Origin: Vitrella brassicaformis CCMP3155
Taxonomy: Eukaryota > Protista > Chromerida
Reading direction: 5' to 3'
Assembly: GCA_001179505.1 (NCBI GenBank)
Contig: CDMY01000482.1
Coordinates: forward strand, 1-64,000
Length of the DNA stretch: 64,000 nt
The notes beneath the pieces are model-generated. The model had not been told where the DNA came from. It worked only from the letters and a program-made list of their open reading frames with translations, and did no database searches. Shown piece by piece: positions 6,021-12,712 of this stretch. The first letter of the stretch is position 1, and every line of letters begins with the position of its first letter. The translations under genes and the position numbers were made by a program.

Positions 6021-7605
6021 TCACTCTGTCGGTGGCTTTGGTCTGCCCTCCCTCTGCCTCACCCACCTTTCCACATCCATCGACGGGTCAAACCCACCCA
6101 AAGGAGACGCCACCACTGCCCAATCAGGCGTCCGCCGCCAGTACACCTCAGGACAGCACGACACACTCTCTACTACACCACCCCCACTACCCTCACCCCG
6201 GCCCCCCATGAGGTCATGGAACCTCTCAAAGTCTATCCATGTATGCCACTCCCCCGTCACATCGTCCCGCAATCGGTGGCTGGCGATCAGCACCGAGTTG
6301 GAGTGGGCATGCTCACACGCCAATGAGTAGGATGCGGCCGCCGACACCGCACCCGCATGACCAGCTTCTGCTCCATCACCACTCGGTTCGTTGCTCAGGG
6401 CCTCGACGAGCTGCTGGGCGAATGCCTTGGTTTCCCACTGCTGCGGCACATTCGTCATCCGCAGCTGCATTTGCCTCGACGCGCCAGGGAAGGTCATGCC
6501 TTTCACCTCAACCAAGTCGGGCCGGCCGCGATGAATCAAATCAGCATAGCCCTGCACCTCGGTGTCGTTCCACTCCTTGACGACGGTCAGCCGAAACACT
6601 GTCCTCTCCCGCCGCTCTCGAAGCGCGTCAACCGAGTCGAGCAGACGGCCCCACGCATCCTTGAACAAAGGCCGGTCTATCTTCACGAGGGCGTCCTCTG
6701 ACGGGGCATCGACCGATAGATAGAGCTGCGTGACGGGCGACAGGGTGCGAATCAGCTCGGGATGCTGGCCGTTGGTCACGAGAAAGGTCGAGATGCGGCG
6801 CTCGTGGAGCATGGCGGTGAGCTGGTTGATGTGGGGGTACATGATTGGCTCGCCGACCAAAGACAGGGCGCAATGCTGAGGGCTCAGGGCCTCTTGTAGC
6901 CGCTCTGGTGTGACGCCCGGCGCAGAGGCCATTTGCTGGACCATCCTCTTGTGTGCCGCAACAGCATGCTCGATGATCATCTCTGGCGGATCAGCAGTCC
7001 ACCGGAAGCCTTTGCTCACGGGGTGGGTGTGGTGGCGCCTGACGTCAGCAACGCAGTAGCACAGAATACACAGCACAGCATCCCACAATGAATGCAAGAG
7101 ATCCGGTCAGGTCGGCTCACCAGCAGAAGACACATCGATTCGCACACGCGAGGGATGTGGTGGTCTCCATGCACCTGGTGAACAAGGAGCTGCAGAGAAA
7201 TGATTCATACCTTCTACCTACCGCACCTGTGCGACTCGATGCCGTAGAAGGTGTGCTTATAGCATCCGCCCCGCCCTTTCATTTGGCTCTTTGTCCACCG
7301 ACACATCTATGTCACCACACAAGAACACACACACACACACACTGCAGTCAGTAGTGTGTCATTCATATCGCCCCGGCGCAGCCGACCTTGACGGCGCTGT
7401 GAGTGCCGACCAGCTGATAGCCCTGCTGAGAGAGATTCTGCCTCAGCAACGGGTTGAGCATCTCAGGCCGCTGGTTCCCTGCAGATGGCGATGAGCCGTA
7501 TCCTTCATTCGCCTTGAGCGAAGCTGTGATGCTGAAGCGCCTTGATGATTGGAGAAAGATCTTTCCAGATCTCAACCTGCATGGGGTGGGATGTGCGACC
7601 TTCAT
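6021..7605 (-). CDS. TYW1: tRNA wybutosine/wyosine synthesis radical SAM enzyme TYW1 (no flavodoxin domain seen); exons 7605-7387, 7306-7227, 7174-7121, 7038-6021, 456 aa
   Basis: QGYQLVGTHSAVK|MCRWTKSQMKGRGGCYKHTFYGIESHRCMETTTSLACANRCVFCWRHH (CxxxCxxC), CALSLVGEPIMYP, STFLVTNG, TQLYLSVDAP, RTVFRLTVVK, ACEHAHS, WHTWIDFERF. Exons sum to 1371 nt (3n). Start codon is less certain. Confidence 0.93.
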
Positions 7606-8097
7606 CCTTGCGACCTTCGTCCCTGTCGTGCTTTAGTCCAACTCCCCGCAGCGATTTCACGAAACGCGAGCTGGGAGGCGATTCCGTGCCGGCTTTCGCC
7701 TGTTCTCTGGGGCTGTCTGCCGCCGTGTGCGTCTACTCGAAGCGTCCCTACAAGGTGGCAGCGTCTTGCAGAAATCCCATGAGTCCTTGTCCAGATCGAA
7801 GAGGAGAGTGTGTTCATGAGCCGTGAGGACAAACGCCGGGCAAGAAGTGTCCTCTCGCTTCATTCACAGGCAGGCTATGCTCCCACCCCACACAACAAAC
7901 AGAAACACGCAGGCAGCTGCACACCGCTCAACACCCATACGCCGCACACTCCACCCATACGCCCAGCAAGTGTTGGGAACAGTGAGGATACATGAGGACT
8001 ACAGAGAGAGCCCCACCACAGCCGCCTTATCTGAAGACGGCCCGGCCCGCCCACTACATCAATCACACAACGACACGTGGGACACCAGCATGCCTGA

Positions 8098-10670
8098 CTA
8101 GGCCACCTGCAGCTGCTTCTGCGATGGGGTGCCAGTGGGCTGCTGGTCCCTCGCCATCTCAGTGCTGTCATTCGGCTCTCCATTTGGCGCTCCCGCGCCG
8201 TCATTTGACAACATGGCCTCGTCCCATTCCATCCGCCTCCGAATGCGGCCAAACATGAAGTGCTGAAACAGACAAAGCCAGACACACACATGACAATTAA
8301 TAGCATGTTGACACTGCCGTCTAATCTGTAGTGTGTGTACCTCAGTGCTCCATCCCTCCCGCTGCAGGCAGCTCAGGAGTGTGGGGAAAGTCTTGTCGGC
8401 CACAGATTGCGCCAGCTTGATCAGGGGCAGCAGCGCCTTGACAGAGTGGGTCGACTGCCGCATTCGGGCACACTCGATGCGCCAGGCAATCGGGCGGGGC
8501 AGCAGCTGCTGCCACAGGGCCGGCGGCTGTGGGCTTGGGCTTGACGTGCTGCTGAGGAAGGCCTGGAGGTACTGGCGGGCGAGCAGGCTCTTCAAAATGT
8601 CCATTCCCTTCGCCTGTGTGTGCAGCACCACCGTCGCCTCGCTCGGCTCGGGCAGCAGCAGGTACTTCTCATCACGGAAGATCCGCACAAGGGATCGCAG
8701 CTCGTCAGGTGTGACGCAGCTCTGCCTGATGGTCTTGAACAGGTGGGGGCCGCCTCGTGCAGGCATCACCACGCGCTCGGTGCAAGCGACGTGCTGCGGG
8801 GTGGGGATGGCCAGTTGGTCGGTGGCCAGAGAAGTGGCCGAGGCGATGGTCAGCGCCGAGGAGAGCTTGTTGGTGGGGCCGCGGTCGAACCCCCGCTCGT
8901 TGAAAGACTCCACGGCAGCTGTGGCGTCGCTGCTGGTGCTGTTGGTGGTCTCGGTGGGTGACGATGCCCCACTCATGTTGTCAGGGATGAGTGGCGGGAC
9001 GGCCGCGAGTGTCTCGTCCACAAACTGTGAGATGACCATGTTGGCCCGCTCATGGTTGAGCCACCGAAACACCACACTGCGGATCTCCCGATAGATGGCG
9101 TACATGTCGATAGTCGACAGGATGATGTAGGCCAGGCCGATGGAGGCCTGCCCCGTGCCGATCATGCGCGACAGAGTGATGCCGAAGCACATCCCCAGGA
9201 GGTCCACGACGGCCACCTGGGCCTCGCCCTTGGCCGTGATGTCGCCGATGTTGCGGCTGCCGCCGGCGAACGAACTGTAGACGGCGTTGCGCGTGGCCGA
9301 CGACGTGAGCAGCGACATCTGCTTCATCGTGTTGGCCAGCGTGGCGAGCAGCAGGAATGACGTCGGGAACACGTACGTCGTCACCTCCAGACCGTTGCCC
9401 ATGGCGTACAGCAGCGAGCTCCGAAACCGCCACCGCTTCGCGTCCACATCGAAGGACCGGCCCATCTTGGACGCCCACAGGAAGCGCCCGATCTTGCCGA
9501 GGGCGTCCTTGAGCACCCACGAGACGGCAGCCGCCTGCCCGAGCCGCCTGGCCTTGATGCCGAGAGCCAGCAACAAGGCCTGTGTGCCGAAGACGTTGGC
9601 CGTTGCCGACACCAGCCGCTGGAAGGCTCGCCACCTGGTGTAGCCGTAGTAGTCGGGCGTGACGTTGTCGGGGACGAAGGCGCTCTTGAGGGTGTCCTTG
9701 ATCTTCCGCGGGATGTGCTTGGCGAGCGGCAGGTGCTCGCCATCGACCGACTGGGCGACCGATGAGATGAAGAATCGCTTGGTGTCCTGGTCCCAGATGA
9801 TGCGCCGCCTCCCTGACCCGCTCGACTCGTAGATGGCGTCGGAGTCTACCGGGTCCCTGCCCAGCAGGTTGCAGGCCAGGTTGGTCAGGTGGTGGGAGGG
9901 GAGGGCGTCGGGGACCTCATCGGGCTCACCGTTGCCCGTCACGTCACCTGCAAACACGTACAGGCAGCCACCTCAACGATAGATACGATTGCATATTTCT
10001 TCCTGTGGCTCGGCTCACTTTCGCTGAATCCGTCCGCCACGTTGCCAAGGACTTCGAGCTCCTCTGGGGAGAAGTGTGCCGAGAACTTGGCCGTCTCGAA
10101 GCGCACCTTGATAGGCGTCTCTGCCGTCAGGTTGGGGTATTCCAGGACCTTCTCCACCCGCCCCACAAAGCCCTTTGGATTCAGCCCGCATGGCTGGAAC
10201 TCCCGTTTGTGAAAAAAGCGCACGTGGCTGGCCGTCACGCGCACGATGTCGCCCACACGAGGGCATGGGGCCGGTGGCTCGGGGTCGCTGGGCACATCTG
10301 CGTCTGCGGCCGTGTCCTCGGCGGTCTGTGTGAGCTTCGTGAGCTGTGATGACGCCGCTGAAAAAGCGACCAGTCTGCTGCTTGACAGTCTGCTGCTTGA
10401 GCCAGATCGCCATGGAATGACCTGAACACGACATCAACTCAACACACAGTACAGGAGATGAGTGGCTGTCTGTGCGTGGCTGTGTGCATGATCTGCCTCG
10501 CTAACCGCTTTGGATCTGAGATCTTTGGTGAGTCTTGATGGGAGGAACTCGGGGCGGCTGGAGAGGCTCTGAAAGGCGCTGCAGAGGCGGAAGCAGATGT
10601 AGGTGAGCAGCAGGGATGGACCGCAGACACGCTGTGCCGTCGGAAACCTTCTCCGACGCCTCCGAGCCAT
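8098..10670 (-). CDS. Plastid-targeted fusion: FTR variable-chain (FeThRed_A)-like domain + RUS/DUF647 (root UVB sensitive) domain; exons 10670-10506, 10421-10019, 9947-8341, 8262-8098, 779 aa
   Basis: The leader has a hydrophobic stretch ending CSAF followed by an S/R-rich transit-like region. Next is VGDIVRVTASHVRFFH...GFVGRVEKVL...TAETPIKVRFETAKFSAHFSPEELEVL, then DUF647 (FVPDNVTPDYYGYTRW, SWVLKDALGKIG, DVDAKRWRF). All four exons are phase-compatible (2340 nt). Confidence 0.85.
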
Positions 10671-10851
10671 CGTCGCTCTCAAAATGGCAACTGCAGAGGG
10701 CCCAGGCAGCTACGTGCACGCGCGAACTCCCACTGCAGCCGCCTTCACTTCAAGATCGCTACTGCAGTAAGCTCGCAGACCTCGGGATCTTCGCGTGCTC
10801 CCTGAAACCGCTGCTGCTCGGGATCTTCGCGTTTCCCTTGGGCTCTTTGCC

Positions 10852-12712
10852 ATGACGATATGGAGGAGTCAGCGAAACCTCTGTAAGGGCGTGAGGCTCC
10901 TTCAGCAAGATGTTCAAGAGCTGCTGGAAAAGCCACTGTGTCATTCTAAGGAGGAGGATGGAGATGAGGGCGAGGATGATGAGGAGCTGGAGAACATCGC
11001 GTTGTGGAGCGGCGGCCTGTGTCTGCCCTTTGATCCGGATGAGTATGTCGGGGCGGTGACCATCAAGACTGATCAAGGAGGATCTGGCGAGCGCTTCGTG
11101 GCAAGCAGGGATCTAGACGCTGGGACCCTTGTTCTCGCCGAATGCGCCATTGCAACAGGCGTCAAGGCCGTCAGCTTCTACCGCTCCCTGTACAACGACG
11201 CATCGGCGAGCGAGGCCGACTTGCCGATGGGCATCGACACTGCTGGTGTGCTATCCGCTCTCGTGGATGTCATCCTCGTGGCGGCAGAGGAGTCGACAAA
11301 GGCTCTGAGGGATGTGTTTGGTAAGCTCAAGGGTCTGTACCCCCGGACCAAGAAGGAGCTGAAGCAGCTGGGCAAATGGGAGAGCGGCGAGACGCGGGGG
11401 ATACTCGACAGGCATCTTGACAAGGAGCTGACCGATATGCTGCAGCGGATCCGTGGTCGTGTTGACATCGACGACCCTGCGAGAGAGAAGGAGCGGCTCA
11501 AGTGGGTGGTCAGCCTCAACGCTCTCGGCATGTACCAGCAGTCCGAGCAGTTCTGTTACAGCAAGGCAGGCTTCGACAAGATGGAAGCTGTCGGGTTGTT
11601 CTTCCTCGCATCCTTCTTCAATCACAGGTGACCCACACGACCAGCCACCCACCCAGAGCCGCCGGCACACGCACGTGTGTGTTGAGCGCCTTGTCTGTCT
11701 GTCTGTCTGTTTTCCTTCAGCTGCTCTCCCAATGTGTGTCGATACTCCATCAGCGAGTGGATGCTCTTCCACACAATCAAGCCTGTCAAGAAGGGCGAGC
11801 CCCTCACCATATCCTACGTCGAGGAGGAGCACCTCGAGGAGCCCCTGTGGCTGCGCCGTGCCGTCCTCGCCGAGAACGGATACCAGCGCTTCAAGTGCGT
11901 GTGCCCCAAGTGTGTGGAGCAGAGGGACGACCCGTCGCAGACAGAGGAGGGCTGTCCGGTCATGCAGCCCTTCCAGGATGGCTTTGACGAAGAGCTGCTC
12001 AAACTGCCGCCAAATCAACGACTGCAACACATACAGGTGGACACACACACCATCCCACACACAGGAAAACACACTGACGCACAAATGCCATCTCGGTAAT
12101 CTGCCGTGTCCTCAGGAGGTCAAGAGCGCAGTTGAAGAGGCCCTCCAGACCCGCCGTGTGCTGCTGTCCGACCGCATCCAGCTGAGTCTCATGGAGGGAG
12201 CGGCACACGCGCAGCTGAGGAACTTCGACGAGGCAGATCGGGCCTGGGGCAGAGCGTATGAGGTCGCCACTGAGGCCCTTCCTGACAATGACGAGCATCT
12301 AGTGGCCCTGTCGACCCTTCTCGCCTGCTGCGCTGCCTGCCTGCCGCCATCTGAGCAGAGCCACTTCATGCTGGAAACGTGGCTCGCCACAGCCGTCAGG
12401 TGAGTGAGTGGGCCGACACACATTTAGCATCAAGTGGGATACGAACGAAGCGTGTGTGTCTGTGAGTGTCTCTGCAGGATCCACAGTGTCTGTTTCGGCG
12501 GCGGCGTGCACCTGTACCGTCAGCGATATCGAGTCGAGCTGCAGCAGCTGGACAACTTTCCCCCCGACACCCATGACACCGTCCGAGAGGCCATCTCGAG
12601 TGTGTTGACGAGGCTGGAGTGCGCCGAGATGCGGCAGAGAGTGGTCGCCAGGAGGAAGCGAAAGATACTGCATCGGATGTTTGTGTGGACGAAGCGAAGG
12701 AGGCCTGCATGA
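10852..12712 (+). CDS. SMYD-like SET-domain lysine methyltransferase with C-terminal helical/TPR-like region, multi-exon; start uncertain
   Basis: GERFVASRDLDAGTLVLAE (SET-N), GLFFLASFFNH|SCSPN (NHSC motif), IKPVKKGEPLTISY and post-SET FKCVCPKC. Exons 10852-11627, 11721-12036, 12116-12399 and 12478-12712 are phase-compatible. Confidence 0.9.

What the first reader, a model, noticed from the sequence alone, without database searches (positions are those of the whole stretch)
8098..10670. Ferredoxin-thioredoxin reductase variable chain fused to a RUS/DUF647 protein behind a plastid leader
Seen: exon 2 encodes VGDIVRVTASHVRFFH...NPKGFVGRVEKVL...LTAETPIKVRFETAKFSAHFSPEELEVL and splices (A|GTGAGC...TTGCAG|GT, phase 1) in frame into the DUF647 exon. 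The leader ends in CSAF plus an S/R-rich stretch. Known: cyanobacterial FtrV reads roughly VGDRVRVTSSVVVYHH...FDLQGMEGEVAAVL...ISANLPVLVKFEQRFKAHFRPDEV (from memory); plant RUS1/2 are plastid proteins tied to vitamin B6 and UVB responses; ASAF-type motifs mark complex-plastid import. Inference: a possible physical link between the light-driven ferredoxin/thioredoxin system and a RUS protein. I know of no description of this fusion but cannot search.
Basis: partly seen in the sequence, partly recalled or inferred. Interest (0 to 1): 0.8.

Follow-up and report, generated by a model that had tools for sequence, protein, structure and literature searches.

The report
FTR variable subunit fused to RUS
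The alga Vitrella brassicaformis, and its relative Chromera velia, make one plastid-addressed protein joining the small "variable" subunit of ferredoxin-thioredoxin reductase to a RUS/DUF647 membrane half-transporter, which gives a testable clue to why RUS proteins depend on light.

Summary
On the minus strand, 10670-8098 is a four-exon gene with GT..AG introns of 84, 71 and 78 nt. It encodes 779 aa, identical to the deposited Vitrella brassicaformis protein CEM16729.1 / A0A0G4FQL3.

- **Transcript:** spliced contigs of three public runs carry all four exons in one piece. A DNA run has the unspliced form.
- **Exon 2:** it matches the FTR variable chain by three tests.
  - Pfam FeThRed_A scores 26.1 bits against a cut-off of 25.
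  - PDB chain 1dj7_B matches at E 1.5e-6.
  - FtrV chains are the top fold matches of the predicted model.
- **Exon 3:** a strong RUS domain (PF04884, 213 bits). In the model it is a six-helix half of an MFS transporter.
- **Leader:** a signal peptide followed by Phe, as in chromerid plastid proteins.
- **Conservation:** the Chromera velia orthologue has the same layout. None of the other 118 closest RUS proteins has it, and public Pfam lists miss the domain in both chromerid proteins.
- **Literature:** I found no paper describing the fusion.

Most likely, but inferred only, the FtrV domain holds the catalytic FTR subunit on a plastid-membrane RUS half-transporter, which would couple RUS to photosynthetic redox state. 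I could not determine whether chromerids also have a free FtrV. The scan had flagged this same stretch once before (s1-233293).

The parts
7751..10748 (-). Extent of the mRNA as seen in the longest spliced contig (run X7)
   Evidence: table 8: record 7 covers 7751-8262, 8341-9943, 10015-10419 and 10504-10748. Contigs of the neighbouring divergent gene start at about 10783.
10506..10670 (-). Exon 1: start codon, Arg-rich n-region, hydrophobic core, ...CSA|F (residues 1-32 | 33) and the start of an S/R-rich transit-like stretch (residues 1-55)
   Evidence: hydropathy peak at residue 24. Phe at +1 is the chromerid plastid motif (PMC6668581). No Pfam match.
10422..10505 (-). Intron 1, 84 nt, GT..AG
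   Evidence: joint 'skips 84' in X1, X6 and X7; absent in DNA run X3.
10019..10421 (-). Exon 2: rest of the transit-like stretch plus the FtrV-like domain (residues 56-189 and the first base of codon 190)
10059..10256 (-). FtrV-like (FeThRed_A) domain, protein residues 111-176
   Evidence: Pfam PF02941 26.1 bits, profile 1-67/67. 1dj7_B E 1.5e-6 over chain residues 2-72. Model pLDDT 75, with FtrV chains as the top five Foldseek matches. An Atlas FeThRed_A cluster comes first. It keeps 14 of 18 columns conserved in free FtrVs.
9948..10018 (-). Intron 2, 71 nt, phase 1, the join between the FtrV exon and the RUS exon
   Evidence: joint 'skips 71 (cut +4)' in X1, X6 and X7. If retained, the frame stops at 9941-9939 and gives a 215-aa product.
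8341..9947 (-). Exon 3: linker, small beta sheet, RUS six-helix domain and most of the C-terminal alpha/beta domain (residues 190-725)
9013..9705 (-). UVB_sens_prot / DUF647 domain (residues 271-501); six long helices 288-479
   Evidence: PF04884 212.8 bits. pLDDT about 90. All 50 top structural matches are one lobe of MFS transporters, Z up to 14.9 over about 190-200 residues.
8248..8712 (-). UVB_sens_C domain (residues 602-730; interrupted by intron 3)
   Evidence: PF24160 25.6-29.2 bits, cut-off 20.7.
8263..8340 (-). Intron 3, 78 nt, GT..AG, in frame and without a stop
   Evidence: joint 'skips 78' in X1, X6 and X7.
8098..8262 (-). Exon 4: last 54 residues and the stop codon

Best explanation
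Shown: a single expressed Vitrella gene encodes, in this order, a bipartite plastid-type leader, a genuine FtrV-type beta-barrel domain, a short linker, a RUS/DUF647 six-helix domain with the fold of one MFS-transporter lobe, and the RUS C-terminal alpha/beta domain. The layout is conserved in Chromera velia and so predates the split of the two chromerids. I rate this architecture at 0.95 or more. Inferred, at about 0.4: the only known molecular job of FtrV is to bind the catalytic FTR subunit and shield its 4Fe-4S cluster. The fused domain therefore most likely still binds the nucleus-encoded, plastid-targeted catalytic subunit (FtrB/FTRC) that both chromerids have. That would place a working ferredoxin-thioredoxin reductase on the RUS half-transporter at a plastid membrane. 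Each MFS lobe has both ends on the same (cytoplasm-equivalent) side, so the FtrV domain and the C-terminal domain should both face the stroma, where ferredoxin and thioredoxin are. The result would be light- and redox-dependent control of RUS, or local thioredoxin reduction beside it. The RUS substrate is not known; vitamin B6 has been proposed in the literature. The confidence figure given here is for the whole statement, including the inferred mechanism.
For: Gene model, transcript and deposited protein. FtrV identity. In a read-every-protein search of 1.84 billion representatives, the nearest relatives of the domain are free FeThRed_A proteins of haptophytes, pelagophytes and other ochrophytes. 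Chromera orthologue: FeThRed_A 20.4 bits at 96-163, collinear with Vitrella, while the linkers are unalignable and the domain is kept. RUS half-MFS fold; the Pfam MFS clan placement is reported in bioRxiv 10.1101/2024.04.13.589297. Chromerids have nuclear ftrB (PMC6367104). FtrV is thought to protect the FTRC cluster, and Fd and Trx contact only FTRC (PMC9025218), so a tethered FtrV need not block either docking face. A parallel case is the closest relative of the domain, P0121, which joins a DCC1-like thiol-disulfide oxidoreductase (DGVCNMC motif) to a C-terminal FtrV-like domain. That pairing only makes obvious sense if the FtrV module brings in the reductase. RUS phenotypes are light-dependent in Arabidopsis and Chlamydomonas through an unknown pathway (PMC13115044).
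Against: No test of FTRC binding was possible. The Pfam score is marginal (26.1 against 25) and is not reported when the full-length protein is scanned. Three of 18 family-conserved columns are changed (Pro to Arg/Lys after the conserved His, Asn to Glu/Asp, Pro to Ala), and I do not know whether these touch the FTRC interface. The whole-protein model gives the FtrV part pLDDT below 50, so it says nothing on docking. Membrane, orientation and substrate of the RUS part are inferred from homology only. The fusion is seen in only two species.
Confidence: 0.45

Rival explanations
1. Exapted barrel: the domain descends from FtrV but no longer binds FTRC. It would serve as a general SH3/PsaE-like protein-contact or regulatory module for the RUS half-transporter, for example in dimerisation with a second RUS half or in binding another stromal partner.
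For: The fold is shared with PsaE, PetP and Tudor/SH3-like domains, which follow FtrV in the structure searches. The profile score is marginal, and three conserved columns are changed in the fused forms, one of them (loss of the Pro after the His) in all three fused proteins.
Against: Fourteen of 18 columns conserved in free FtrVs are kept, including both His, the GxxG pair and the AHF motif. FtrV chains clearly outrank PsaE (E 8e-6 against 2e-3). The sister fusion to a thiol-disulfide oxidoreductase points to a redox role.
Confidence: 0.25
2. Delivery vehicle: the two parts end up separate. This could happen by proteolytic cleavage in the variable linker after import, or by a minor intron-2-retaining mRNA that stops at 9941-9939 and encodes leader plus FtrV only (215 aa). 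The gene would then be the source, possibly the only source, of an ordinary free FtrV, and the fusion would mainly ensure co-expression and co-targeting.
For: The linker is non-conserved and very different in length between Vitrella and Chromera. Intron retention gives a clean FtrV-only ORF. No free chromerid FtrV turned up in the searches I could run, though those searches could not exclude one.
Against: Only the fully spliced form is seen in contigs of three runs, although contigs drop rare variants. No cleavage motif is known. I know of no mixed polyprotein of this kind in chromerids (own knowledge, not searched). Conservation of the join in both species argues for a functional link in any case.
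Confidence: 0.15
3. Annotation or assembly artefact: two neighbouring genes wrongly joined.
For: None after testing. The idea arose only because short introns in phase can be found by chance.
Against: Single spliced contigs span both parts in independent runs. An identical ORF is on record from an MMETSP transcript. The same layout is present in Chromera.
Confidence: 0.01

Closest known systems
Ferredoxin-thioredoxin reductase variable subunit (FtrV / FTRA; Pfam PF02941; PDB 1DJ7 chain B, 2PU9 chain B, 7C3F chain E)
   Same: Same fold and sequence family. The match covers the whole 67-position profile and residues 2-72 of the 75-residue Synechocystis chain at about 36-38% identity. The hallmark residues are kept (VGDxVRV, the conserved His, GxxG, VxF, AHF...E).
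   Different: It is not a free 7-13 kDa subunit. It sits between a plastid leader and a membrane protein. It lacks the Pro after the conserved His and the Asn of the ...SxN.P... loop. Partnership with FTRC is untested.
RUS / DUF647 proteins (Arabidopsis RUS1-RUS6, Chlamydomonas RUS1, Plasmodium Pf_UVBSp; Pfam PF04884 and PF24160)
   Same: Strong full-length match of the six-helix domain and the C-terminal domain, a half-MFS fold, and a plastid-type leader as for plant RUS1/2/4.
   Different: It carries an FtrV domain at the N-terminus. No other RUS protein among the 118 other closest relatives does. Red-algal members of the same clade carry a photolyase-type alpha/beta domain there instead.
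P0121, an unnamed 350-aa transcriptome ORF (EukProt): leader + DCC1-like thiol-disulfide oxidoreductase (PF04134) + C-terminal FtrV-like domain
   Same: It is the nearest relative of the Vitrella domain (43% identity, E 5e-11 against 1.84 billion proteins). It is also a fusion of the FtrV module behind a signal-peptide-like leader, and it shows the same loss of the Pro after the His.
   Different: The partner is a soluble redox protein, the FtrV module is C-terminal, and the organism is unknown.
PsaE (photosystem I subunit IV) and other SH3-like barrels
   Same: Same general open beta-barrel.
   Different: They rank clearly below FtrV in fold searches (E about 2e-3 or worse), and there is no sequence-level match.

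Membership tests
FTR variable subunit (FeThRed_A, PF02941) | Profile match above Pfam's gathering score over the whole domain | tested here: met
   26.1 bits against a cut-off of 25, profile 1-67/67, on exon 2 alone. It is marginal and is not listed when the 779-aa protein is scanned whole. The Chromera orthologue scores 20.4 bits, below the cut-off.
FTR variable subunit (FeThRed_A, PF02941) | Significant sequence similarity to experimentally solved FtrV chains and to free FtrVs of other algae | tested here: met
   1dj7_B, 2pu9_B, 2puk_B, 2pvg_B and 2pvd_B at E 1.5e-6 to 6.4e-6. Nine of the ten nearest relatives scanned are free proteins with FeThRed_A at 31.6-54 bits; the tenth is the fusion P0121.
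FTR variable subunit (FeThRed_A, PF02941) | Open five-stranded beta-barrel fold of FtrV | tested here: met
   Model pLDDT 75.1 with five strands. Foldseek ranks 1-6 are FtrV/FTRA chains, TM 0.76-0.78 by target for Synechocystis, and PsaE comes only from rank 7.
FTR variable subunit (FeThRed_A, PF02941) | Family-conserved residues | tested here: met
   14 of 18 columns conserved at 80% or more in 12 free FtrV rows (two of them near-duplicates of others) are identical, 1 is conservative and 3 are changed.
FTR variable subunit (FeThRed_A, PF02941) | Forms a heterodimer with the catalytic subunit FTRC | not testable with these tools
   No multimer prediction is available here. FTRC genes exist in both chromerids according to PMC6367104.
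FTR variable subunit (FeThRed_A, PF02941) | Free-standing small subunit (7-13 kDa mature) | tested here: not met
   One mRNA and one 779-aa ORF. Processing into a free subunit is not excluded.
RUS / DUF647 (PF04884 + PF24160) | UVB_sens_prot domain above the cut-off | tested here: met
   212.8 bits against 28.3. 335 homologues with E of 0.001 or less, the closest non-chromerid at 2.4e-111.
RUS / DUF647 (PF04884 + PF24160) | RUS C-terminal domain | tested here: met
   25.6-29.2 bits against 20.7.
RUS / DUF647 (PF04884 + PF24160) | Six-helix bundle resembling one lobe of an MFS transporter | tested here: met
   Helices 288-479 at pLDDT about 90. All 50 listed matches are MFS transporters, Z 14.9-10.1, each aligned to one lobe. 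For helical bundles a Z under about 13 can be generic, and the top 10 rows exceed that.
Nucleus-encoded protein of the chromerid complex plastid | Signal peptide followed by Phe at +1 and a transit-peptide-like stretch | tested here: inconclusive
   The sequence shows ...RLCSA|FQSLSS and an S/T- and R/K-rich stretch (21 S+T and 9 R+K in 72 residues). Chromera has ...CGG|FLVG. This fits PMC6668581, but no SignalP or ASAFind run was possible and the protein is not in that paper's held supplements.

The most novel reading that the evidence does not exclude
The chromerid fusion is a 'Rosetta stone'. On this reading, RUS half-transporters in general, including plant and green-algal RUS1/RUS2, work with or are switched by the ferredoxin-thioredoxin reductase system. 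That would explain the long-unexplained light dependence of rus mutants. It would also give FtrV a second role as an adaptor that brings the reductase to specific clients, as the DCC1-FtrV fusion also suggests. The red-algal photolyase-domain fusion on the same RUS clade would be an alternative route of light input.
Probability: 0.2. Interest if true: 0.8.

Novelty: new variant of a known kind. Interest (0 to 1): 0.6.

Why it matters
RUS/DUF647 proteins occur across eukaryotes; my own recollection, not checked here, is that humans have one too. They are essential or important in plants, and they still have no agreed molecular mechanism. Their phenotypes depend on light, through a pathway that the most recent Chlamydomonas paper explicitly leaves open. 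FtrV is regarded as a purely structural partner of the catalytic FTR subunit, and I found no report of it fused to anything. A natural, expressed fusion of the two, conserved in both chromerids, gives a concrete and testable hypothesis: that FTR docks on RUS. It also suggests that FtrV can act as a portable docking module, a view supported by a second fusion to a thiol-disulfide oxidoreductase. The domain is missed by the precomputed public Pfam lists for both chromerid proteins, so this link is currently not visible in those annotations.

Tried and rejected
- **Word-indexed search for other long proteins with the domain** (P0001, region 98-192). It returned only the query and not even Chromera, so it was too insensitive to say anything.
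- **Profile search with full-length free FtrVs for a free chromerid FtrV**. It returned only 11 proteins, none named Vitrella or Chromera.
- **Tree of the FtrV domains** (75 columns). It is unresolved. A clade of the three fused domains is neither supported nor rejected (p-AU 0.36).
- **Whole-protein AlphaFold model**. The FtrV part has pLDDT below 50 because only two rows cover it, so it gives no information on docking to the RUS part.
- **Contig of P0122**. It is a 4.8-kb metagenome piece with no clue to the organism.
- **ESM Atlas searches**. They returned only plain DCC1 or FeThRed_A clusters and no further fusions.
- **Supplements of PMC6668581** and a full-text search for Cvel_20822. Nothing was found.
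- **Earlier notes of this scan**. There is no note of a free FtrV or FTRC elsewhere in this genome.
- **Artefact reading.** Rejected.
- **N-termini of ochrophyte orthologues** (about 100-230 aa). They show no FtrV domain and no photolyase-type domain.

Full report
**What is in the sequence**

Read on the minus strand, 10670-8098 is a four-exon gene.
- Exon 1 (10670-10506) encodes 55 residues. They comprise an Arg-rich start, a hydrophobic core ending ...RLCSA, then Phe, and the start of an S/R-rich stretch.
- An 84-nt GT..AG intron follows.
It ends in phase 1 at A|GTGAGC.
- After a 71-nt intron, exon 3 (9947-8341) begins with GT, which completes a Ser codon, and runs in frame through the DUF647 region.
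- A third intron of 78 nt (8340-8263) is in frame and free of stops. That is why the mechanical ORF list shows one 619-aa ORF.
- Exon 4 ends at the stop codon at 8098.

It only missed the last small intron.

**Is the join real?**

Yes.
- The 779-aa product is identical to the deposited Vitrella brassicaformis CCMP3155 protein CEM16729.1 / A0A0G4FQL3. The collection's record lists an MMETSP transcript ORF among the sources of this same sequence.
- Contigs of three public runs (X1, X6, X7) skip exactly the three introns.
- In X6 and X7 a single contig of 2581 and 2765 nt runs from the 3' untranslated region (7751/7869) to the 5' end (10682/10748).
- The contig of a DNA run (X3) is unspliced.
- These are contigs, so a minor unspliced form cannot be excluded.

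**Is exon 2 an FtrV domain?**

Five independent lines agree.
1. Pfam FeThRed_A scores 26.1 bits against a gathering score of 25, over the whole 67-position profile, when exon 2 is scanned alone. This is marginal, and the hit disappears when the 779-aa protein is scanned whole.
2. phmmer against all PDB chains finds only FtrV chains. 1dj7_B matches at E 1.5e-6 over residues 2-72 of 75.
3. A read-every-protein search of 1.84 billion representatives returns 13 hits.
   - Apart from the protein itself and one low-complexity match, the hits are small algal proteins plus one fusion, P0121.
   - Nine of the ten I scanned carry FeThRed_A at 31.6-54 bits, and the tenth is P0121.
   - The named ones come from haptophytes, a pelagophyte and the ochrophyte Chrysoparadoxa.
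4. An AlphaFold model built on this alignment (pLDDT 75) has FtrV/FTRA chains as Foldseek ranks 1-6, with PsaE only after them. A cyanobacterial FeThRed_A cluster is first in the ESM Atlas search.
5. Of 18 columns conserved in the free FtrVs, the Vitrella domain keeps 14 identically and 1 conservatively.

**Conservation and distribution**

- The Chromera velia orthologue (P0021, Cvel_20822, 849 aa) is collinear with the Vitrella protein: leader ending ...CGG|F, FtrV-like domain (FeThRed_A 20.4 bits at 96-163), a much longer unalignable linker, then RUS.
- A small profile built from the two domains finds nothing in the other 118 closest RUS proteins.
- In a tree of the RUS domain, the two chromerid proteins are sisters (SH-aLRT 96). 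They sit in an unresolved group with ochrophyte proteins and a red-algal clade.
- The fusion therefore arose once, before the Chromera/Vitrella split, and is not seen elsewhere at the sensitivity I had.
- Chromera did not appear. I assume this is because it shares the 50% identity cluster of P0001, but I did not verify that.

**The RUS part**

- PF04884 scores 212.8 bits and PF24160 scores 25.6-29.2 bits.
- The whole-protein model has six long helices (288-479) at pLDDT about 90, followed by an alpha/beta domain.
- All 50 best structural matches among 48,161 PDB representatives are MFS transporters, each aligned by one lobe, with Z up to 14.9.
- This agrees with Pfam's placement in the MFS clan and with the half-transporter reading in bioRxiv 10.1101/2024.04.13.589297.
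- That preprint also recalls that plant RUS1 and RUS2 interact through this domain, and that RUS1, RUS2 and RUS4 are reported from the chloroplast envelope.

**How it most likely works**

- According to the review PMC9025218, FtrV is thought to protect the 4Fe-4S cluster of the catalytic subunit. Ferredoxin and thioredoxin contact only the catalytic subunit.
- Both chromerids have nuclear ftrB genes (PMC6367104).
- The simplest reading is therefore that the fused domain still binds FTRC. A complete reductase would then sit on the RUS half-transporter, on the stromal face if the usual MFS topology holds.
- This is inference; I put it at about 0.4.
- It gains some support from the nearest relative of the domain, P0121. 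That protein joins a DCC1-like thiol-disulfide oxidoreductase with an intact DxxCxxC motif to a C-terminal FtrV-like domain, a pairing that makes sense if the FtrV module recruits the reductase.
- It also fits the light dependence of rus phenotypes, whose pathway is still unknown (PMC13115044).

**Rivals**

- The domain could be an exapted SH3-like contact module that no longer binds FTRC. All three fused forms have lost the Pro after the conserved His.
- The two parts could be separated after import, or by a minor intron-2-retaining mRNA that would encode a 215-aa leader-plus-FtrV protein.
- I could not determine whether chromerids also have a free FtrV.
- An artefact is excluded.

**Comparison with what is known, and novelty**

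- Both domains belong to known families.
- The domain meets the sequence, profile, fold and residue tests for FtrV. It fails the 'free small subunit' feature, and the FTRC partnership is untested.
- I found no paper that mentions this architecture.
- The precomputed public Pfam lists omit PF02941 for both chromerid proteins.
- I therefore rate it a new variant of known kinds. It is real, expressed and conserved in two species, with a plausible but untested mechanism.
- The scan had flagged this same stretch once before (s1-233293).

Noticed in passing
Related proteins P0017, P0022, P0043, P0049, P0086 and about 53 more (no window coordinates): Red-algal members of the same RUS clade carry a conserved N-terminal extension of about 280-340 aa. 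Its first part matches the DNA photolyase N-terminal alpha/beta domain (PF00875, 38-40 bits in Galdieria against a cut-off of 26.6), and no FAD-binding half was detected. These proteins form one clade in the RUS tree (support 100). This is a second, independent light-related module on the same RUS lineage. None of the RUS papers I read or searched mentions it.
   Followed up: partly
P0121 (350 aa, EukProt transcriptome ORF, organism not given): It has a signal-peptide-like leader, a DCC1-like thiol-disulfide oxidoreductase (PF04134, 83.7 bits, DGVCNMC) and a C-terminal FtrV-like domain. It is the closest relative of the Vitrella domain, which makes it a second kind of FtrV fusion.
   Followed up: partly
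window 9939-10018 (-): If intron 2 is retained, the frame stops at 9941-9939. That gives a 215-aa protein with the leader and the FtrV domain only, a possible route to a free subunit from the same gene. Only the spliced form is seen in contigs.
   Followed up: partly
window 6021-7097 (-): The downstream neighbour has a long ORF matching Radical_SAM plus the Wyosine_form domain, so it is TYW1-like and probably belongs to tRNA wybutosine synthesis.
   Followed up: no
window 10783-11631 (+): A divergently transcribed neighbour begins only about 35 nt from the 5' end of the fusion mRNA (contigs of X6 and X7). Its first ORF has no Pfam match. The two genes probably share a short bidirectional promoter region.
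   Followed up: no
P0001 and P0021, just before the FtrV barrel: Both chromerid fusion proteins have Cys residues immediately before the conserved GD of the first strand (APCPRVGD and NFCCGD). The free FtrVs aligned here have none there. The significance is unknown.
   Followed up: no
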